In this document: positions 40,020-64,000 of the stretch, in pieces
How positions within the stretch are numbered: the first letter of the stretch is position 1
How the letters are laid out: each line of letters starts with the position of its first letter
Virus record (IMG/VR): IMGVR_UViG_3300045970_000794
Span: 124,001 to 188,000 of that record
Length of the DNA stretch: 64,000 bases
Direction: 5' to 3' (one strand)
Made by a program: the position numbers and the translations under genes
Notes under the pieces: model-generated
The model's input: the letters and a program-made list of their open reading frames with translations, nothing else
What the model was told of the DNA's origin: nothing
The model's database searches: none

Positions 40020-41651
40020 ATGGAAAAATTCAAATTAAATGATTTTATTCTAAAAGCTAAAACCATTCATGGTGATAAATATGATTACTCTATCACAAAA
40101 TATCGTAATATAACATCAAAAGTTAAAATAATATGTCCGATACATGGTGAGGTTGAATTAGTTGCTAGAGAACATCTTTATAATAAAATTGGATGTCCAA
40201 AATGTTATAGTAAATTCAATGATATTGAATTAGTAATAAATGAAGCTAATTTGATTCATGGTGATAAATATGATTATTCATTAGTTAATTATATTAATAA
40301 AAAAACTAAAGTTAAAATAATTTGCCCAATACATGGTGAATTTGAACAATTATTACATTCACATGTGAACAATAAACAAGGTTGTCCAAAATGTAGTGGT
40401 AATAAACGATTAACAACTAATGATTTTATTGAAAAAGCTAAAACTATTCATGGTACTAAATACGATTATTCATTAGTTGAATATGTTAATAATTTAACTA
40501 AAGTTAAAATTATATGTCCAATCCATGGTGAATTCGAACAATCACCATCAAATCATTTAATTGGTAGGGGTTGCAAAATATGTGGTAATATTAAATTATC
40601 AGAATTTAGAACTAAAACTAGTGATGAATTTATATCTGAGGCTAATAAAATTCATAATAATAAGTACATATATAATTTAACTGAATATATTGATTGTAAA
40701 AATAAAGTTAAAATAATATGCCCAGTACATGGCGAATTTGAACAAACACCAGATGCCCATATAAATGGTAAACAAGGTTGTCCGAAATGTTCAACAACCA
40801 ATAGCCAACCTGAAGAAGAAATTAATGATTTTATATTTTCATTGGGTATTGAAACTGTTAGACATGATAAAAAAATCCTTAATGGTAAAGAGTTAGATAT
40901 CCTAATACCATCACATAATATAGCTATCGAATTTGATGGACTATATTGGCATTCTGAATTATATGTATCATCTGATTATCATTTATCAAAAACAAATTTA
41001 TGTATAAAAAATGGTATTCAATTAATTCATATATTCGAGGATGAATGGATGTATAGAAAAGAAATAGTTAAAAGTAGATTAAAAAATATATTGGGGTTAA
41101 CCGAAAATAAGGTGTTTGCTAGGAAATGTGAGGTTAAAGAGATTCCACCCAAAATTGCAAAATCATTTCTTAACAATAATCATATTCAAGGATATACTAA
41201 TTCTAATATTAAATTAGGATTATACCACAATAATAATTTAGTTTCTGTTATGTTATTTAATAAACCAAGAAAAGGTATTGGAAATACGGTTGATGGTTAT
41301 GAATTAAGTAGGTTTGCTAGTAAATTAGATATTAATGTGCTTGGTGGTGCATCTAAATTATTTAAATACTTCATCAGTAATTATTCAGCTAATAATGTAA
41401 TAAGTTATGCTGATAGAAGATGGTCTAATGGTAATTTATATGATAAATTAGGTTTTACTTTAAAATCTATTAATAGACCAACGTATTGGTATATATTTAA
41501 TAATAAACGTAAACATAGATTATTATTTAGAAAACAATTATTAATTAAAGATGGTTATGATAAGAACTTAACTGAGCATAGTATAATGCTCAATCGTAAA
41601 ATTTTTAGAATATATGATTGTGGTACTAAAACATATATTCTAAAATTGTAA
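40020..41651 (+). mobile_element. Homing endonuclease with four DUF723-like zinc-ribbon repeats and a Hef-like PD-(D/E)xK C-terminus
   Basis: Four copies of HGxKYxY...KVKIICPxHGE...GCPxC, then ELDILIPSHNIAIEFDGLYWHS and IYDCG. Opposite orientation to the structural operon. Confidence 0.78.
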
Positions 41652-41699
41652 GGCATTTAATTTTTTATTAATAATATTAGCTAATTTATAATTTTCATC

Positions 41700-41739
41700 T
41701 TTTATCCCATTTTTCAATTAAATTTTCCATAATTTTTTT
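41700..41739. repeat. 40-bp direct repeat, copy 1 (orphan gene start MENLIEKWDKR*)
   Basis: Identical to 42118-42157. Mini-ORF 41695..41730 on the minus strand. Confidence 0.8.
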
Positions 41740-41752
41740 CTAATACACTAAT

Positions 41753-42148
41753 TTAGCTTAATCTTGTTATATGTTTTAGATATAAAGTACATAAAAAAAT
41801 TAACGACTCAGCTTCAATATCAATCTTTTTATAATCAATATGATTACTTAAATTACTTAAATTTAAACAATCATTTAAATAGTTAATTAATTTTAACATA
41901 TTTTCTTCATCAAACATATAACTATCTGGTAATTTCAAAGCAACATCACCCCAAGTAATAATATTACCAACTAAAAGTCTATATATTGCTGGAAATACAA
42001 CTTCAGTTGTTAAATTGTTCGAACAATGTTTATCTAATAATATTTTAGCACACAATTCATAAGCACTAGCAACTTTTAGTTTTAAAACCTCATCTTTAAT
42101 TGTATTTAATACAAAAATTTTATCCCATTTTTCAATTAAATTTTCCAT
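41753..42148 (-). CDS. Hypothetical protein (131 aa; probable start MENLIEKW at 42148)
   Basis: The ORF-track start at 42235 overlaps the upstream gene. The ATG at 42148 has an A-rich leader. Confidence 0.5.
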   Translation of the reverse strand: MENLIEKWDKIFVLNTIKDEVLKLKVASAYELCAKILLDKHCSNNLTTEVVFPAIYRLLVGNIITWGDVALKLPDSYMFDEENMLKLINYLNDCLNLSNLSNHIDYKKIDIEAESLIFLCTLYLKHITRLS

Positions 42149-42157
42149 AATTTTTTT
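42118..42157. repeat. 40-bp direct repeat, copy 2 (start of the 131-aa gene)
   Basis: TTTTATCCCATTTTTCAATTAAATTTTCCATAATTTTTTT. Confidence 0.8.
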
Positions 42158-42194
42158 TATAAATAATTTAATTAAAAATCTAATAAAATAAAGA

Positions 42195-57839: not shown

Positions 57840-58364
57840 TTATTCAGCTGAAAATTCTATTTTATCAACAGGAGCGCAGATTACAGTTCTAAATGCACCT
57901 TCAAACCCCATTATTGTATGTTTATTATCAAAATGTTTTATACCATCATTAACAACACTGAAAAATCTAAGTTCAGTTTCGGTTATTGGGTATCCAATGT
58001 AATCACCATAAGATAAATCAACTTCTAATTCAGTTAATTGTTCTTCATAGATTCCAAATGTTAATTGTCCATCTTGAATGTATCTTAAACTACCAGAATC
58101 TTTACCATATACAGCATTTTCTGGTTCCGCTATGATTGGTACTACTTTTAATTCAACAGGTGTTTTAAATCTGATATCTTTTTTACCAGCTTCACCATAT
58201 AATGAATCAGTTTCACTCAAACCCCTATCAACTTGATAAAGTACCACAACAAAATTACCATCACCTTCAATTGCTTCCCTACCTAAAGATACCTCAAGTT
58301 CAAAATCCTCCCTAGAATACCATTTATTTATCCTAGTTATAGGCATTTTTCTACTATTTCCCAT
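57840..58364 (-). CDS. Neck/head completion protein (T4 gp14-like)
   Basis: VVLYQVD...SLYGEA..IRFKTPVEL, YIQDGQLTFGIY and DLSYGDYIGY. Confidence 0.55.
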   Translation of the reverse strand: MGNSRKMPITRINKWYSREDFELEVSLGREAIEGDGNFVVVLYQVDRGLSETDSLYGEAGKKDIRFKTPVELKVVPIIAEPENAVYGKDSGSLRYIQDGQLTFGIYEEQLTELEVDLSYGDYIGYPITETELRFFSVVNDGIKHFDNKHTIMGFEGAFRTVICAPVDKIEFSAE

Positions 58365-59130
58365 GATTTTTAACGTATTTATGTATTATTTTATTTGAGC
58401 AACCATATATCTCCCCAATTTGAACTAAATTTAATCCATTTTGTTTATATTCAGTTATTTGATTAACATCTAAATTATATTTATTAGACTTAGGTTTATA
58501 TATCTCAAAACGCCTAAGATTATTATTTATAACATCCTTTGAACAATTAAAATGTTTTGCTATCTCAGTTATTTTAAAGTTTTTATTTAAAAATAAATCT
58601 CTTAATTCATCCCCATTTATTTTATATTTAAAATTACCATTATTTTCATATTTATGAATTCCAAGTAATTTAACTTTTTCACTTCGTTGTTTTAACACTT
58701 TTTTCGATAATGATTTACCGTGCATCGGGTTGTTTTTACCAATATTAATTTTCTTCATATATTCTTTGGTTTCTTCGCTATGTTTTAAACCTAAACACCC
58801 TTCACCACCTTTGGTTATATTATAACCAATAGATTTTTCAGTTGAATTATATTTTTGAATCCAATATTTTTCTTTATTATCTAATATTTCTTTAGTATTA
58901 CAATGTTCAAGAATTTCCTTAATAAAATTATTTTTACCGTATTTTTTAATAGCTAATTTTATTATTTTACCAGAACCAATATAATTAGGATTATTTTTAG
59001 AATCTTGACCAATATAAATTTTACCATTGATTAGGTTAGTTGTTTTATAAACAACCATATCAAGTTCAAAATCTTCACGAGAATAGAACTTATTAATTCG
59101 AGTAATTGGTATCTTTCTATTTGCTGCCAT
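58354..59130 (-). mobile_element. GIY-YIG homing endonuclease fused in frame to a duplicate of the neck gene's first 24 codons
   Basis: MAANRKIPITRINKFYSREDFELD, then MVVYKTTNLINGKIYIGQ (own ATG at 59058), EKYWI..YN and NUMOD3 HSEETKEYM. Confidence 0.85.
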
Positions 59131-59219
59131 AATTTTTCTTTTTAGATAAATATTTATGTATTCATAAATAAGCCAGTAAGTATTGATTTTTTATTAATAT
59201 TTAGTAAATTTAGTTCACT

Positions 59220-61076
59220 ATGATAAATATAGATGATATAAAAAATCGGTCATCATTGACATTATTAGAAGGTTATAGTGGTAATAACCCATATATTCGT
59301 AAATTGAAATGGGATTATGTACAGCGTAAAACTAAATTAACTGATAATCAAATGAAATATGTAATTGATAATCACGACAAAGAGCCAATTAAAATGGATA
59401 AAGTCGTGAGGATATCACTATTACTAGGTGAAGAGTTACAAAAACAAACAAATGTTTCATTCGTACCAGAGAAAATATTAATTGAATATTTATTGGCTGA
59501 TACTGAAAAAGCTTTCCACATAATTGGTAAATTAAAGAAAAATCAAAAGGAATCCAGAATGTACTGGATACCTAAAACTCAAATATTTGATGACATATAT
59601 TTTGATGAAATTGACATTGAAGTTGATTTTGACAAATATAAAGCTCTTGATTCACTACATAGAGAACCATTCGAACATCAAAAAACGGGTGTTAAATTTC
59701 TATTAAGTCGAAATGGGTGTATTTTAGCTGATGATATGGGTCTTGCCAAAACATGGCAAGCAATTGTTGCGGCTTTGGAGTCTAATTGTATGAAAATATT
59801 AGTAGTTTGTCCATCTTCAGTTAAAATTAATTGGCAACGTGAAATTAACTGTTTTTGTGATGATACTGTAATTGTTAGTGGTAAAAAATGGAAATCATCT
59901 AGATTCACAATTATTAACTATGATATTCTTAAAAATTTCCATACAATTAAAGAACCTAAAAAATCAGAAGAAGAAGTTACTGTTGAGGTTAAGACTCAAT
60001 TAATTAAAGGTGATTTTGATTTAGTTATTATCGATGAAGCCCATTACCTTAAAAACCCAAAAAGTATTAGAGGTAAGATTATGACTGATTTATGTATTAA
60101 ACATAATATTGAAAAAGTGTGGTTATTATCTGGTACTCCAATTACAAATCGACCTATGGATTATTATAACCTTTTAAAGCTAATTAAGAGCCCTATAACA
60201 GACAATTGGGTCTTTTATGCAAAAAGGTATTGCGATGGGAAAAAGTTCTTTAAAACGCTTAAAACTGGTCAAAGAAAGCAAATATGGCTTACAAATGGTT
60301 CTTCTAACTTAGATGAGTTGGCTCAGAAAACTAGAAACATTATGTTAAGGCGTAAAAAGGAAGAAGTATTGGATATGCCAGAAAAGACTAGAATTCCAGT
60401 CTTCCATGAGTTAGATAAAGCTGGATGGGCTGAATATGATAATCTTTGGGATGAATATTTAGAACAAAGGAAACTTGACGGTAAAACAGTTAATCTACAA
60501 CGAGATTTAACTGAAACTATTTTATTGAGACGATTCATTGCTAAACAATCAATACAACATACTATTGATTTAGCTAATAGTGCGATTGAGCAAGAACAAA
60601 AAGTAATTATATTCACAACATTTACTGATGAATTATTGGAATTGCAAGAATATTTTGGAAAAGAATGTGTTGTTCACTACGGTAAAATAAATGACCGACA
60701 AAAGCAATATGCTGTTGATAAATTTCAAACTGACCCTAATATTAAAGTGTTTATTGGTAACGTAATATCGGCTGGTGTTGGTATTACCTTGACAGCTGCT
60801 AATATAGTTATATTTAATTCATATGATTGGACACCTGGTAATAATGACCAATGTGAAGACCGTGCTTATCGTATTGGTCAAAATAATAATGTTACAGTAT
60901 ATTATCATTTATTTATGAGAACCATATCAACAGTGATGTGGAAAATATTATATGAGAAAAGAAACATAATCTCAATCATCATGAGTGAACAGAATTGTCC
61001 AGAAGATATTGCGATTGATATTATATTAAAAGATGAATTAACTAATGGAACAGAAAGTAATTGTATATCTGATTAA
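59220..61076 (+). CDS. SNF2/SWI2-family helicase
   Basis: HQKTGVKF, LADDMGLAKT, VVCPSSVKINW, IIDEAH, LSGTPITNRP, GVGITLT and QCEDRAYRIGQ. Confidence 0.88.
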   Translation: MINIDDIKNRSSLTLLEGYSGNNPYIRKLKWDYVQRKTKLTDNQMKYVIDNHDKEPIKMDKVVRISLLLGEELQKQTNVSFVPEKILIEYLLADTEKAFHIIGKLKKNQKESRMYWIPKTQIFDDIYFDEIDIEVDFDKYKALDSLHREPFEHQKTGVKFLLSRNGCILADDMGLAKTWQAIVAALESNCMKILVVCPSSVKINWQREINCFCDDTVIVSGKKWKSSRFTIINYDILKNFHTIKEPKKSEEEVTVEVKTQLIKGDFDLVIIDEAHYLKNPKSIRGKIMTDLCIKHNIEKVWLLSGTPITNRPMDYYNLLKLIKSPITDNWVFYAKRYCDGKKFFKTLKTGQRKQIWLTNGSSNLDELAQKTRNIMLRRKKEEVLDMPEKTRIPVFHELDKAGWAEYDNLWDEYLEQRKLDGKTVNLQRDLTETILLRRFIAKQSIQHTIDLANSAIEQEQKVIIFTTFTDELLELQEYFGKECVVHYGKINDRQKQYAVDKFQTDPNIKVFIGNVISAGVGITLTAANIVIFNSYDWTPGNNDQCEDRAYRIGQNNNVTVYYHLFMRTISTVMWKILYEKRNIISIIMSEQNCPEDIAIDIILKDELTNGTESNCISD

Positions 61077-61317
61077 TGAGTGCCCTTATTGTGAAAAGCT
61101 TGAAAAATTACTTAATGAAGCTAATATTGAACATACAGCTATCAATATTGACACTAAAGAAGGTGATGAATTGTTTAAGCCAGTGTATGACTTAACTAAA
61201 TCTGAAATGGTTCCAACAATTGTGATTGGGGAACGAATATTAGTACCAGAAATTAGTTTTATGACAATAGATATGGCATTTAAATTAATAAAAATGACAT
61301 TAAGTGGTGAAGTTTAA
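61045..61317 (+). CDS. Glutaredoxin/NrdH-like redoxin
   Basis: CPYC active site and VPTIVI cis-Pro motif. Confidence 0.8.
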   Translation: MEQKVIVYLINECPYCEKLEKLLNEANIEHTAINIDTKEGDELFKPVYDLTKSEMVPTIVIGERILVPEISFMTIDMAFKLIKMTLSGEV

Positions 61318-61608
61318 TTATTCTTCGCCTTTTTTGTTCATTAATTTAGTTATTCTTAAATTTAATATTTTTTTACCATTAATTGTTGGGTGACCGAACT
61401 CATCGGTATCAATATCTTTAACTTTAACCTTTTTATTTCTAAATTTACCCATTAAAACTTCATCACCAACCTCAATTGGTAATTCAATCACTTCATTCAA
61501 CTCATTAATTCTATCAATTTGAGATTCAGTTACAATAATTCTTCTAGGATTACCATTTCTGATTTTATCGTACTGTGATTCAGTAATTTTTATAGTTCGT
61601 TTAGCCAT
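61318..61608 (-). CDS. Hypothetical protein with two I(K/V)xTESQ motifs (start MAKRTI at 61608)
   Basis: KRTIKITESQY and RRIIVTESQI. SH3/KOW-like C-terminus (EVGDEVLMGKFRNKKVKV). Confidence 0.55.
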   Translation of the reverse strand: MAKRTIKITESQYDKIRNGNPRRIIVTESQIDRINELNEVIELPIEVGDEVLMGKFRNKKVKVKDIDTDEFGHPTINGKKILNLRITKLMNKKGEE

Positions 61609-61677
61609 TGGATATGTTTTTATATAAATATTGTGCTGATATTGAAAGTTATTGATATTTATATGTAAAAGATTATT

Positions 61678-61737
61678 ATGGCAGCAACACAAGCAGAAAA
61701 AGATAGATTATTCAGTATATCAAATCCAATTTTTTAA
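61678..61737 (+). pseudogene. Orphaned 5' end of the neck gene (MAATQAEKDRLFS...)
   Basis: Matches MAASEIEKTRLF at 62725 at 8 of 12 residues. Similarity ends at the endonuclease stop codon (61712-61714). Confidence 0.65.
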
Positions 61738-62482
61738 CAATATTTTCATTGTATTTTATTTCGACTAGTGTAATATTATTTTTATTACAATATTTTCGTT
61801 TAATTTCATCACTCTCAGTTGTTAACTTAAATGCATTCTCACCAAAAAGTTTGCATGGTCTATAATGTTGTTCGCCTTGATATTCAATACATGTATTATA
61901 TTCTGGAATATAAAAGTCAAATGGTAATAGATTAATTCGCTTGCAATCATCAAATTTATGTTGTGGAATGAAATTAATATTGTGTTTATTCAAATAATCT
62001 CTAATTGTTTTTTCACCATTAGATTCAGAACACATTGGGCATCCACGACCTTTTTTATGGTGATGTGGTATCTGTGTAAAATCACCATGTATTGGACATG
62101 TGATGATTATTTTAGTCGTAGAATTAACATATATAACTTTTGAATAGTTATAAAAACCATTATGTATTTTTGATAATTCATTAATATATGATTCGGTCGT
62201 TATTCTTGGTATTTTTAATTTGTATGCCTTTTCTTTAATGTCTTTAGCATCTCTTCTTAATTTTTCCCCACAATATTTACTACCAAAATTACTATAGTTT
62301 TCTTTTAAAAATAAAATTTCATCAGTACCCCAAACATTTAAAATATTTAATCCTAATTTATTTGCTTTAACACGTATTGCATTTTTATTTCTATCTAAAA
62401 ACGATGTACATCCAGCTACACCGTTAATCGGGTAGTTTTTGATTAATATATCAATTTCTTCATTAGTCCAATATGTGTTCAT
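61712..62482 (-). mobile_element. Homing-endonuclease-like protein: helical repeats, DUF723-like zinc ribbon and PD-(D/E)xK/DUF559-type domain
   Basis: WTNEEIDIL repeats, CPIHGDF...GCPMC and LPFDFYIPEYNTCIEYQGEQHY. Confidence 0.75.
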
Positions 62483-62642
62483 GTTTTATACCTATATTAA
62501 TTTTTTCCCTTATTATTTCAGATAATTTAACTATTCTATTTTCTTCATTACTACGCTTAATCGTTAAATTAACCAATTGATTATAGATATTTTCATCTAT
62601 TTTAATTGATATGTGTTTCAAATTCATTTTATTTCGTCCCAT
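62463..62642 (-). CDS. Small ribbon-helix-helix-like DNA-binding protein (59 aa, not in the ORF track)
   Basis: MGRNKMNLKHISIKIDENIYNQLVNLTIKRSNEENRIVKLSEIIREKINIGIKHEHILD*. Alternating beta strand followed by two helices. Overlaps the endonuclease start. Confidence 0.55.
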   Translation of the reverse strand: MGRNKMNLKHISIKIDENIYNQLVNLTIKRSNEENRIVKLSEIIREKINIGIKHEHILD

Positions 62643-62724
62643 AATATATTGTATTACTTTATAATAAATATACGAATATTTAAAAAATTAGTTGCATTCA
62701 GATATTTATTTAAAAAATAAAATT

Positions 62725-63894
62725 ATGGCTGCAAGTGAAATTGAGAAAACACGCTTATTTAGACAAGTTAGACATCAACTAGGTGCTCCAATGCGTAAAA
62801 TTGAGTTACCAGACGAAAATTTAGTAACTTTATTGGAATTATCTATTGAAGATTACGCTGAATATGTACATAATTGGCTAATAGATAGTCAATGGTCATC
62901 ATTTATAGGTCAACCTATTGATACTTTAGATATGGCATTCGCATTAACAACTAGAACATTAGATTTTGAGACACAATTTACTTATGCTTACTCAAAACAA
63001 GTTGGTTTACAAGCTAGAGGTCCATGGGAACTCAAAAAAGATTATGTTGAGATAGAAGCTGGTAGACAAGTTTATGAAATTCCAGCTGGTCGTGAGGTAA
63101 ATCAAGTATTATGGTTAACCCCATCGGTAACTAATCGTGCATTATTTGCTAATTTTGGTGGTTTTGATAACGGTATTGGTGGTGGTTACGCTCAAACTGG
63201 TTTTGGAGTCGGTGGTGGTGGTACTGGTGCTGGTTCTGGTGGTATGGGTGGAAGAGGTGGATATTATATCGCACCAGCATTTGATGTTTTATTGACTGCG
63301 GCCGATATGAATCTTAAACATAGATTATTAAGAAGTGATTTAGTATATAAAATAACCGCTGGGCCTAATGGTACTAAGTTATTACATTTAATTAGCACAC
63401 CAGGTTCTAAAATGACATTCGGTATGGGTGGTCAAGGTGGAAGTATGGCTGGTTCTAGTTCTTTAGGTATTGCTGGATGTCACGTATGGTATCATTATTA
63501 CGATACTAATGGTGATGTTGATGCATGTAGAGCGGCTAATTTAGATATTATTACGATGCCGAATGAAGTACCATTAACTAGATTAGATTTTGATGTGTTA
63601 AATGAACCTACAAAAATATTAATTCGTCAAATATTAACAGCTAGAGCTAAAATAACCTTAGGAAGAACTAGGGGTAAGTTTGGTGGTGTTGTTGGTCCAC
63701 CAGAAGCTGAAAGAACTATGGATTGGGAAAGTTTATTAACTGAAGGTAATGAAGAATATGGTAAAATATTTGAAAGATTAGCTGCTAGGTTAGAGCAAAT
63801 GACTAATACTAAAATGTTAGAGCGAAAAGCTAATGAAGCTGAAAACTTAAATAAAACATTAGCTTATAGACCCTTAGGATTTTACGTTATTTAG
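62725..63894 (+). CDS. Neck/head-tail connector protein (T4 gp13-like); probable start ATG 62725
   Basis: RQVRHQLGAPMRKIEL, Gly-rich insert, KITLGRTRGKFGG and LLTEGNEE. Confidence 0.62.
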   Translation: MAASEIEKTRLFRQVRHQLGAPMRKIELPDENLVTLLELSIEDYAEYVHNWLIDSQWSSFIGQPIDTLDMAFALTTRTLDFETQFTYAYSKQVGLQARGPWELKKDYVEIEAGRQVYEIPAGREVNQVLWLTPSVTNRALFANFGGFDNGIGGGYAQTGFGVGGGGTGAGSGGMGGRGGYYIAPAFDVLLTAADMNLKHRLLRSDLVYKITAGPNGTKLLHLISTPGSKMTFGMGGQGGSMAGSSSLGIAGCHVWYHYYDTNGDVDACRAANLDIITMPNEVPLTRLDFDVLNEPTKILIRQILTARAKITLGRTRGKFGGVVGPPEAERTMDWESLLTEGNEEYGKIFERLAARLEQMTNTKMLERKANEAENLNKTLAYRPLGFYVI

Positions 63895-64000
63895 TAATTT
63901 TTTTTCTAATTTTTTAATTATATCTTCATTATACCTAATAATAATTAAAGGGATGCTATTAATATAACAGTATCTCTTTTTTATTTTATCTCTTTTTCTA
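63874..64000 (-). mobile_element. C-terminal fragment of another DUF559/PD-(D/E)xK-type endonuclease (partial)
   Basis: RKRDKIKKRYCYINSIPLIIIRYNEDIIKKL...* resembles the tail of 61712..62482 (DEIKRKYCNKNNITLVEIKYNENI). Confidence 0.5.

What the first reader, a model, noticed from the sequence alone, without database searches (positions are those of the whole stretch)
61655..62762. Antisense endonuclease cassette leaves an orphan gene start and rebuilds promoter plus start for the second neck gene
Seen: motif ATATTTAT (61655) is followed by MAATQAEKDRLFS (61678), cut off exactly at the stop codon of an oppositely oriented nuclease. After the cassette, ATATTTAT (62702) is followed by MAASEIEKTRLFRQVRH (62725), with 8 of 12 residues identical. 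Inference: a third, independent case of terminus replacement, using a different nuclease family and the opposite orientation, and here the regulatory motif is duplicated as well.
Basis: partly seen in the sequence, partly recalled or inferred. Interest (0 to 1): 0.66.

Follow-up and report, generated by a model that had tools for sequence, protein, structure and literature searches.

The report
Nuclease cassette carrying spare gene start
A selfish nuclease gene cassette sits 38 bases inside a giant phage's essential neck gene and keeps that gene working by bringing its own promoter and first 12 codons. The original start is left stranded beside it.

Summary

**The insert.** Window 61716-62762 (1047 nt) is an insertion in a T4 gp13-like neck gene. 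It holds:
- a Vsr-like homing endonuclease on the minus strand (61712-62482)
- a 59-aa ORF (62463-62642)
- a minus-strand ATATTTAT motif for these two ORFs
- a plus-strand ATATTTAT motif followed by a foreign copy of gp13 nt 1-38

**The displaced start.** The native promoter motif (61655) and gp13 nt 1-38 (61678-61715) remain as an orphan.

**Decisive evidence.** Five closer relatives (70-88% gp13 identity) lack the cassette.
- Against three of these relatives, the orphan's nt 1-30 match at 24-29 of 30.
- The working copy matches at only 15-16 of 30, then 18-24 of 28 from nt 39 on.

**Recurrence.** Two other phage lineages (L182/L183, L035/L036) show the same architecture, joined at gp13 nt 36-44. 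A GIY-YIG endonuclease has done the same to a second gene in this window.

**Novelty.** Gene-end replacement by endonuclease elements is described in fungal mitochondria. A phage version that replaces a 5' end together with its promoter looks like a new variant. Nuclease activity, cleavage site and transcription are inferred, not shown.

The parts
61318..61608 (-). p96, a small minus-strand gene. It is native to this sub-clade and is not part of the insert.
   Evidence: A homologous 96-99-aa minus-strand gene holds the same place in cassette-free relatives. The blastn match to L179 runs through it. ATATTTAT on the minus strand (61632->61625) lies 24 nt before its ATG.
61655..61662 (+). Native gp13 promoter-like motif ATATTTAT, now orphaned.
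   Evidence: It lies 23 nt before ATG 61678. The 26-nt leader differs at 1 position from L014's. 20 of 26 nt are identical to L179.
61678..61715 (+). Displaced native gp13 nt 1-38 (orphan start). The open frame runs on to a stop at 61735-61737, giving 19 codons.
   Evidence: 35 of 38 nt are identical to cassette-free L179, then 4 of 22. Nt 1-30 match L179/L180/L181 at 28, 29 and 24 of 30. Profile score 23.0 bits.
61716..62762 (.). The inserted element (1047 nt): nuclease, small ORF, back-to-back promoter-like motifs, and a foreign gp13 nt 1-38.
   Evidence: Boundaries come from the blastn match to the cassette-free relative L179. The element is absent from the contigs of P0002, P0003, P0004, P0006 and P0007.
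61712..62482 (-). Homing-endonuclease-like gene (256 aa). It has two N-terminal W..EE (Myb-like) repeats, one DUF723/CapR-like zinc module and a C-terminal Vsr-like PD-(D/E)XK nuclease domain. Its stop codon lies in the last bases of the orphan gp13 fragment.
   Evidence: phrog_559 at 1.6e-53. AlphaFold2 model of residues 93-256 with pLDDT 94. VIA-align Z 10.9 to Vsr 1cw0 and Z 10.6 to I-Bth0305I 3r3p. At least 9 paralogues in the 362-kb genome.
62463..62642 (-). 59-aa ORF upstream of the nuclease, overlapping its start by 20 nt. It may be a small ribbon-helix-helix-type DNA binder (tentative).
   Evidence: Small ORFs hold the same place in L024, L035 and L182. Those have weak RHH-type Pfam hits. 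The window's ORF has no significant hit.
62664..62671 (-). ATATTTAT on the minus strand, 29 nt before the ATG of the 59-aa ORF. This is the cassette's own promoter-like motif.
62702..62709 (+). Element-borne ATATTTAT that now precedes the working gp13 start.
   Evidence: It lies 23 nt before ATG 62725. The 26 nt before the ATG match L179 at 16 of 26, against 20 of 26 for the orphan copy.
62725..62762 (+). Element-borne replacement of gp13 nt 1-38 (MAASEIEKTRLF-R).
   Evidence: Nt 1-30 match L179/L180/L181 at only 16, 16 and 15 of 30. From nt 39 identity returns to 24, 22 and 18 of 28. Codon families have switched (Ser AGT against TCA, Arg CGC against AGA/AGG) while the residues are kept.
62725..63894 (+). 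Working gp13-like neck gene (389 aa). It is a chimera of a foreign first 12 codons and a native remainder.
   Evidence: PF26809 Phage_T4_gp13 is recorded for it and its relatives. 82% DNA identity to L179 over 62701-63854.
63874..64000 (-). 3' end of a second Vsr-like endonuclease gene. It continues to about 64791 outside the window, and its last codons are antisense to the last codons of gp13.
   Evidence: It is absent from L179, where PolB follows gp13 directly.

Best explanation
**Shown by comparison.** A 1047-nt endonuclease cassette is inserted after nucleotide 38 of the gp13-like neck gene. The native promoter-like motif and first 12 codons stay on its left as a dead-end 19-codon ORF. 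The right end of the cassette supplies a diverged second copy of the motif and of codons 1-12, which joins in frame to native codon 13 onward. The neck gene therefore remains whole without an intron or intein.

**Inferred.**
- The nuclease is a homing endonuclease that cuts cassette-free gp13 alleles near nt 36-44 during mixed infection.
- The break is repaired by copying from a cassette-bearing genome. The cassette and the donor's promoter and 5' end are copied in, while both recipient 3' ends are kept up to the cut. This would explain why both junctions fall at the same gp13 position.
- Once formed, the arrangement has homology on both sides: the orphan start on the left and gp13 from nt 39 on the right. 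It can therefore spread like a mobile intron, but with a spare gene start doing the job of splicing.
- The orphan promoter, if active, would transcribe antisense across the nuclease genes and on into gp13.
For: **Empty-site relatives**
- Five closer relatives lack the cassette and have a single start.
- The blastn boundaries fall at 61715 and 62701, and 62 nt of L179 are matched twice.

**Native against foreign copy**
- Orphan nt 1-30 are 80-97% identical to three empty-site relatives, against 50-53% for the working copy.
- Identity of the working gene returns to the local level (about 81%) from nt 39 on.
- The serine and arginine codon family switches in the working copy point to long separate evolution under protein constraint.

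**Nuclease**
- It has a Vsr / I-Bth0305I-like fold.
- It has at least 9 paralogues in the genome.
- It is sporadic among relatives.

**Recurrence**
- L182/L183 have an orphan MGVNADERDKLF flush with the stop of a nuclease 49% identical to the window's. A small ORF and a new promoter-like motif with the start MSITNIERDKLF follow.
- L035/L036 have an orphan MGPTSEERERLY, a junction at nt 44, a different nuclease type and a small ORF.
- A GIY-YIG insertion in this window left the same kind of footprint in another gene.

**Assembly**
- One contig at depth 53 spans the whole region, and a contig from another study spans the right junction.
- L185, from a sister sample, spans both junctions.

**Other**
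- No intron signature was found.
- In phage T4, one-sided illegitimate double-strand-break repair, co-conversion and promoter displacement by invading endonuclease genes are described (PMC2988022).
Against: - No cleavage, homing or transcription data exist. No RNA run was found.
- The donor of the foreign 5' end was not found.
- In L035 the working copy is identical to the orphan over 38 nt. Divergence of the spare start therefore cannot be the general way the cassette-bearing allele escapes cutting.
- The three junctions are not at one identical base (nt 36, 38 and 44). L035 carries a different nuclease type, so at least two origins are needed.
- The 59-aa ORF has no significant similarity to anything.
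- ATATTTAT also precedes a replicative helicase and other endonuclease genes. Its timing class is unknown, and its role as a promoter rests on position and conservation only.
Confidence: 0.78

Rival explanations
1. A single accident in this lineage. A free-standing endonuclease gene lay upstream of gp13 in a diverged co-infecting phage. It was copied in by one-sided, illegitimate break repair. The orphan and the spare start are a by-product, and the unit has no mobility of its own as a composite.
For: - One-sided illegitimate repair at microhomology is documented for T4 intron homing (PMC2988022).
- An 8-nt near-identity (TTATTYAG) lies at the junction.
- Donor-type layouts exist: grx | nuclease(-) | promoter | gp13 without an orphan in L004 and L007.
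Against: - The same architecture, with the nuclease stop within a few bases of the end of the orphan fragment, occurs in three lineages.
- An accidental left junction should often include donor DNA beyond the nuclease stop; none is seen.
- L182 and L035 have grx directly upstream, so homology on the left was available there.
Confidence: 0.3
2. An in-place tandem duplication of the promoter and first 38 nt arose when the nuclease gene inserted. The two copies then diverged, and no foreign 5' end was imported.
For: In L035 the two copies share a perfect 38-nt repeat, as a fresh duplication would.
Against: - In the window the non-functional copy is the conserved one (24-29 of 30 to relatives). 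The functional one is the diverged one (15-16 of 30), while the rest of the gene is about 81% identical. This is the reverse of what decay of a redundant copy predicts.
- The codon family switches need multiple substitutions.
Confidence: 0.07
3. The cassette is a self-splicing intron, or lies in one. The orphan start would be exon 1, spliced to nt 39 of gp13.
For: The junction is exact, and the orphan joined to native codon 13 would give the ancestral protein.
Against: - No Rfam family matches 61300-63000 even at E <= 1.
- The endonuclease is antisense.
- A complete second promoter-like motif and start, in frame with the gene, would be redundant.
- All three lineages keep the spare start.
Confidence: 0.03
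4. Chance resemblance in AT-rich DNA, or a chimeric assembly.
For: The genome is 30% G+C and the motif occurs 47 times in the window.
Against: - The profile score is 23 bits against a null maximum of -1.5.
- The alignment with the empty-site relative ends exactly at 61715.
- Independent contigs span the junctions.
Confidence: 0.02

Closest known systems
Mobile endonuclease elements that replace gene ends in fungal mitochondria. Free-standing GIY-YIG or LAGLIDADG ORFs occur with partial duplications of atp6, cox1 or the atp9 N-terminus (PMC7487136). The Allomyces atp6-ORF360 hybrid gene is cited from my own knowledge of Paquin, Laforest and Lang 1994 and was not read here.
   Same: - An endonuclease ORF travels with a foreign copy of the end of the gene it invades.
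- The native end is displaced and persists as a remnant.
- The gene stays functional without splicing.
   Different: - Here the host is a phage.
- The end replaced is the 5' end, together with its promoter-like motif.
- The nuclease is Vsr-like and antisense to the host gene.
- A second small ORF and a separate promoter-like motif belong to the cassette.
Free-standing homing endonucleases of T4-type phages (Seg, Mob, Hef) and intronless homing (PMC2988022).
   Same: - Sporadic nuclease genes lie next to conserved genes.
- Spread is by break repair with co-conversion of flanking DNA.
- There is a known risk of displacing promoters.
- One-sided illegitimate repair has been shown experimentally for the td intron.
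   Different: - T4 examples sit between genes, or split a gene into two polypeptides (nrdA of Aeh1, gene 43, gene 60).
- None described in that review keeps the invaded gene whole by carrying a spare promoter and start.
EDxHD / Vsr-like homing endonucleases, with I-Bth0305I as prototype (PMC3239194).
   Same: - The C-terminal Vsr-like catalytic domain matches (Z 10.6 over 87 of 97 residues).
- DNA-binding modules are N-terminal.
- The host is a phage.
   Different: - I-Bth0305I is encoded in a group I intron and has NUMOD-type modules.
- This protein is free-standing and has Myb-like repeats and a DUF723/CapR-like zinc module.
- No sequence-level match to any PDB chain was found.
HEG families with repeated CapR/DUF723 zinc-finger DNA-binding modules at recombination boundaries in ICP1 and other phages (PMC10448857).
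   Same: The DNA-binding modules are of the same kind, the genes are multi-copy within one genome, and they sit near essential genes.
   Different: - Those carry T5orf172 or HNH nuclease domains.
- A term search of that paper for duplicat*, remnant, truncat* and fusion turned up no duplicated gene start.

Membership tests
Free-standing homing endonuclease gene (HEG) | Encodes a nuclease domain of a family known from homing endonucleases | tested here: met
   The model of residues 93-256 has pLDDT 94. Z is 10.9 to Vsr (1cw0) and 10.6 to the I-Bth0305I catalytic domain (3r3p). phrog_559 at 1.6e-53.
Free-standing homing endonuclease gene (HEG) | Present or absent among otherwise collinear close relatives | tested here: met
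   The gene is absent from five relatives with 70-88% gp13 identity. The flanks are collinear at about 81% DNA identity.
Free-standing homing endonuclease gene (HEG) | Cuts the gene-free allele at or near the insertion site and is copied in by repair | not testable with these tools
   This is inferred only. Both junctions fall at one gp13 position, and two other lineages have insertions at nt 36-44.
EDxHD (Vsr-like) homing endonuclease family | Vsr-like PD-(D/E)XK catalytic fold in the C-terminal domain, with DNA-binding modules N-terminal | tested here: met
EDxHD (Vsr-like) homing endonuclease family | Composite catalytic motif E...D...x...H...D (PMC3239194) | tested here: inconclusive
   In the 17-sequence alignment A1, E65, D97, E108, H114 and D133 are invariant and occur in that order. 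They were not superposed residue by residue on 3r3p.
Intron- or intein-borne endonuclease | Lies within a self-splicing intron, or in frame within an intein | tested here: not met
   No Rfam match at E <= 1 in 61300-63000. The ORF is antisense to gp13.
Gene-end-replacing endonuclease element (fungal mitochondrial type) | A foreign copy of the gene end lies next to the endonuclease ORF, the native end is kept as a remnant, and the foreign part is more diverged than the rest of the gene | tested here: met
   Working-copy nt 1-30 match at 15-16 of 30, against 18-24 of 28 for nt 39-66. Orphan nt 1-30 match at 24-29 of 30.
Transposon with target-site duplication | Short identical direct repeats and a transposase | tested here: not met
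   The repeat unit is about 62 nt and only 63% identical in its coding part. The cassette holds no transposase.
T4 gp13 neck protein family (the invaded gene) | Match to Pfam PF26809 Phage_T4_gp13 | tested here: met
   PF26809 is precomputed for the protein and all 120 listed relatives. Atlas clusters carry it in 87-98% of members. The local Pfam copy gave no hit, and my own structure model was too poor to use.

The most novel reading that the evidence does not exclude
These are a distinct class of composite mobile element in giant phages. An endonuclease gene, with a small partner ORF, carries a spare promoter and the first codons of its target gene as part of the mobile unit. It can therefore home into the coding sequence of an essential gene, using the displaced native start as its left homology arm. 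This would be a third way, besides introns and inteins, for a homing endonuclease to live inside a gene. The stranded promoter would then give antisense control of the nuclease.
Probability: 0.4. Interest if true: 0.78.

Novelty: new variant of a known kind. Interest (0 to 1): 0.62.

Why it matters
Homing endonuclease genes are usually thought to survive inside genes only if an intron or intein removes them, or if the split gene products reassemble. Here comparative data with true empty-site relatives show another solution in phages. The invader brings a replacement promoter and 5' coding end and strands the original.

- **A testable target.** The footprint marks the probable cleavage site, gp13 nt 36-44, for an uncharacterised Vsr-like nuclease family.
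- **An annotation problem explained.** It accounts for short 'orphan' ORFs and duplicated promoters that confuse annotation of giant phage genomes.
- **A recurrent process.** In this genome, a 7-kb stretch gained three endonuclease genes compared with its nearest cassette-free relative, and two of them replaced a gene start.
- **A source of chimeric genes.** The process creates chimeric essential genes and moves promoters between phage lineages.

Tried and rejected
- **GenBank phages.** tblastn with gp13 gave no match, and blastn gave only weak hits to the nuclease.
- **IMG/VR.** The 80 gp13 loci listed (of 256 matches) are only 61-66% identical. They could not show which copy is native.
- **p96 and nuclease searches.** Searches in IMG/VR and JGI metagenome contigs found no close relatives.
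- **Orphan peptide scans.** Degenerate-pattern scans for the orphan peptide in viral and metagenome contigs found nothing.
- **Reads.** Four runs showed no cassette-free joint. The joints listed are short-sided and come from other organisms or paralogues. Run X2 does not cover the left junction.
- **PDB by sequence.** Searches with the nuclease, its family profile and the gp13 profile found nothing meaningful.
- **gp13 structure model.** Its pLDDT was 48.9, so it was not used for fold search.
- **59-aa ORF.** Homology to the small ORFs of L024 and L035 is not supported by BLASTP. 'RHH-like' rests on pattern and on weak Pfam hits in the relatives only.
- **Terminators.** None is predicted in 61000-64000.
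- **Mosaic tracts in gp13.** A sliding-window identity search against distant relatives was uninformative.
- **Donor of the cassette.** The second large protein search found no close full-length homologue of the nuclease apart from its own record.
- **An earlier idea, withdrawn.** I first thought p96 was a recent insertion that blocked left-side homology. p96 is native to the sub-clade, and L182 and L035 have orphans without it.
Full report
**Setting.** The window is bases 124001-188000 of a 362,102-bp virus record with direct terminal repeats. It has 30% G+C. Around the finding the genes are:
- an SNF2-type helicase (59220-61076, +)
- a glutaredoxin, 'grx' (61045-61317, +)
- a 96-aa gene, p96 (61318-61608, -)
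- the short 'orphan' ORF (61678-61737, +)
- a 256-aa nuclease gene (61712-62482, -)
- a 59-aa ORF (62463-62642, -)
- a 389-aa gene (62725-63894, +)

The 389-aa protein belongs to the T4 gp13 neck-protein family. PF26809 is recorded for it and for all 120 listed relatives, and for 87-98% of members of its nearest ESM Atlas clusters. The local Pfam copy and GenBank phages gave nothing.

- Both ATATTTAT motifs, both ATGs 23 nt downstream, the two peptides (8 of 12 residues identical) and the overlap of the nuclease stop codon with orphan codons 12-13 are as described.
- The orphan 12-mer fits a profile of gp13 N-termini as well as the true start does: 23.0 against 22.8 bits. The next best of 1241 candidate 12-mers in the window scores -1.5.
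- The DNA similarity of the two copies runs from 61619 to 61715 and from 62658 to 62762. It then stops abruptly, with 1 of the next 7 bases identical.

**The motif is a real, conserved signal.**
- In the gp13 relatives from IMG/VR printed (about 50 distinct upstream sequences among 80 loci), ATATTTAT precedes the ATG in every case. It sits about 22-25 nt upstream in all but L079, where it lies further back.
- In the window it occurs 47 times, 34 of them on the strand that carries most genes. Thirteen occurrences lie 19-32 nt before an ATG or TTG that opens an ORF. These include p96, the 59-aa ORF, gp13, the orphan, a baseplate wedge gene, a DnaB-like helicase and other endonuclease genes.
- It is therefore a general promoter-like element of this phage group, not demonstrably a late one.
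- Each of the two intergenic regions (61609-61677 and 62643-62724) carries a back-to-back pair of the motif, one pointing each way.

**The nuclease.**
- Residues 93-256 were modelled with 16 homologues (pLDDT 94).
- Residues 152-256 superpose on Vsr endonuclease (Z 10.9, 2.5 A over 98 residues) and on the catalytic domain of the homing endonuclease I-Bth0305I (Z 10.6, 87 of 97 residues).
- In the family alignment E, D, E, H and D are invariant, in the order of the EDxHD composite motif (PMC3239194). I did not check this residue by residue.
- Upstream lie one DUF723/CapR-like zinc module and two W..EE repeats. Relatives carry three or four zinc modules.
- The genome holds at least nine further full-length paralogues.
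- The 59-aa ORF has no significant match. Small ORFs in the same position in relatives give weak ribbon-helix-helix hits.

**Distant relatives.** The usual layout is SNF2, grx, 30-50 nt, gp13, with a single start. The grx-gp13 junction is a hot spot for this nuclease family.
- In L004 and L007 a nuclease gene sits cleanly between grx and the gp13 promoter motif.
- In L052, L055 and L064 it is inserted 7 codons before the grx stop. grx then reads into the antisense of the nuclease's last codons, and the native 22-nt grx end is displaced to the far side.
- In L059, L068 and the window's own genome another copy lies just after gp13.

**The decisive comparison.**
- A protein search found gp13 relatives at 88, 87, 80, 78, 73 and 70% identity.
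- For five of them the contig context is on record (P0002, P0003, P0004, P0006, P0007). All read grx, a small minus-strand gene (p96-like, 45-99 aa), about 70 nt, then gp13, with no nuclease.
- Four of these proteins begin MAASQAEKDRLF and the fifth MAASQAEKDKLF. P0002, P0003 and P0004 continue RQVRH.
- In DNA, the cassette-free contig L179 aligns to window 59057-61715 (80.7%) and to 62701-63854 (82.2%). Its 62 nt from the motif to gp13 nt 38 are used twice.

| Segment compared with L179 / L180 / L181 | Identical bases |
|---|---|
| Orphan copy, nt 1-30 | 28, 29, 24 of 30 |
| Working copy, nt 1-30 | 16, 16, 15 of 30 |
| Working gene, nt 39-66 | 24, 22, 18 of 28 |

So the native gene is the orphan up to nt 38 plus the working gene from nt 39. 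Bases 61716-62762 are the insert. The working copy keeps the conserved residues but uses other codon families for serine and arginine. This points to long separate evolution in another functional gp13 gene, not to decay of a local duplicate.

**The architecture recurs.**
- *L182/L183.* These are two ENA scaffolds with the same sequence, and their gp13 is 67% identical to the window's. The nearest full-architecture homologue of the nuclease (P0177, 49% identity, four W..EE repeats) lies antisense between grx and gp13. To its left are the clade's normal promoter-like motif and an orphan MGVNADERDKLF, which ends 1 nt before the nuclease stop. To its right are a small ORF like that of L024, another motif and the working start MSITNIERDKLF.
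- *L035/L036.* An orphan MGPTSEERERLY lies between grx and a 537-aa nuclease of another type, which also has a small ORF. The orphan shares a perfect 38-nt repeat with the working start, and the junction is at nt 44.
- *Second case in this window.* The GIY-YIG gene at 58354-59130 is fused in frame to the native promoter motif and first 24 codons of a 174-aa gene. That gene restarts with a more diverged copy of those codons, and L179 lacks the insert.

**Reality of the assembly.**
- A Logan contig from the probable source run spans 60400-64000 at even depth without differences. A contig from another study covers 62551-62778 with 3 differences.
- A 1595-nt JGI contig from a sister sample (L185) carries the gp13 start, the 59-aa ORF, the nuclease and the orphan start.
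- No cassette-free variant was seen in the reads.
- No Rfam family, and so no recognisable group I or II intron, matches 61300-63000.

**Mechanism.** The insertion, its boundaries, which copy is native, and the recurrence are shown. The rest is inferred.
- The nuclease probably cuts cassette-free gp13 near nt 36-44.
- Repair by copying from a cassette-bearing genome, with both recipient 3' ends preserved, would place both junctions at the cut. It would also bring in whatever lies between the cut and the nuclease gene in the donor, namely the donor's promoter and first codons.
- T4 work shows co-conversion, one-sided illegitimate repair at microhomology, and the danger of displacing promoters (PMC2988022).
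- Once the composite exists, the orphan provides left-hand homology, so the unit can home like an intron.
- I cannot tell whether the window's copy arrived as such a composite or arose by a fresh one-sided event. The composite reading is favoured by three lineages whose nuclease stop lies within a few bases of the orphan's end. The one-sided reading is favoured by the 8-nt near-identity at the junction.
- L035, whose working copy still has the native sequence across the junction, argues against divergence of the spare start as the general source of self-immunity.

**Comparison with what is known.**
- Endonuclease ORFs accompanied by partial duplications of atp6, cox1 or the atp9 N-terminus are described in fungal mitochondria (PMC7487136). 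The Allomyces atp6 hybrid gene is the classic case; I cite it from memory and did not read it here.
- In phages, the cases reviewed are intergenic insertions, or insertions that split a gene into two polypeptides (PMC2988022).
- My text searches found no phage case of a replaced 5' end with promoter. This is not proof that none exists.
- I therefore rate it a new variant of a known kind.

Noticed in passing
window 57840-59153 (minus strand): A GIY-YIG endonuclease ORF (58354-59130) is fused in frame to the native ATATTTAT motif and first 24 codons (MAANRKIPITRINKFYSREDFELD) of a 174-aa gene. That gene restarts at 58364 with a more diverged copy (MGNSRKMPITRINKWYSREDFELE) and no motif of its own. 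The cassette-free relative L179 has a single start, and 56 nt of it match both copies.
   Followed up: partly
window 41699-42164 (minus strand), next to the endonuclease gene at 40020-41651 (+): A perfect 41-nt direct repeat, including a start codon and MENLIEKWDK, flanks a 131-aa gene. The second copy opens only an 11-codon ORF that ends close to the stop of a converging 543-aa DUF723-type nuclease gene.
   Followed up: partly
window 63874-64000 and beyond (genome 187874-188791): A second Vsr-like endonuclease gene converges on gp13. Its last six codons are the antisense of gp13's last six codons. The same arrangement occurs in L059 and L068. It is absent from L179, where PolB follows gp13 directly.
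   Followed up: partly
L052 2867-4080, L055 4805-6000, L064 4797-6000: In these relatives the nuclease gene is inserted 7 codons before the grx stop. grx acquires a new 16-codon tail read from the antisense of the nuclease's C-terminal codons, and the tail resembles the native one. The native 22-nt grx end is displaced to the other side of the cassette.
   Followed up: partly
window-wide, for example 11949, 12624, 16107, 21613, 36382, 59153 (minus strand): ATATTTAT lies 19-32 nt before many gene starts of mixed function. In relatives the palindrome ATAAATATTTAT serves divergent gene pairs. The short, fixed distance to the ATG suggests very short leaders.
   Followed up: partly
L028 and L031, 5983-6399: Directly after grx lies a 138-codon frame with a TTG start. 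Its first 55 or so residues are 47% identical to the gp13 N-terminus. It is followed by an unrelated tail, then the normal motif and gp13. It may be an old orphan start or a small paralogue.
   Followed up: no
L024 4454-5782: An IS605-type OrfB/TnpB gene (Pfam 3.6e-25) has replaced most of a Myb-repeat nuclease gene. Only that gene's first 43 codons and its small upstream ORF remain next to gp13.
   Followed up: no
L184 1-580 (own genome, PolB) and L181 2030-4948: The window genome's PolB gene product is 1454 aa, with a faint LAGLIDADG_3 hit, against 1088-1095 aa in relatives. The SNF2 gene of L181 is 972 aa with a weak intein-splicing hit. Both are likely inteins.
   Followed up: no
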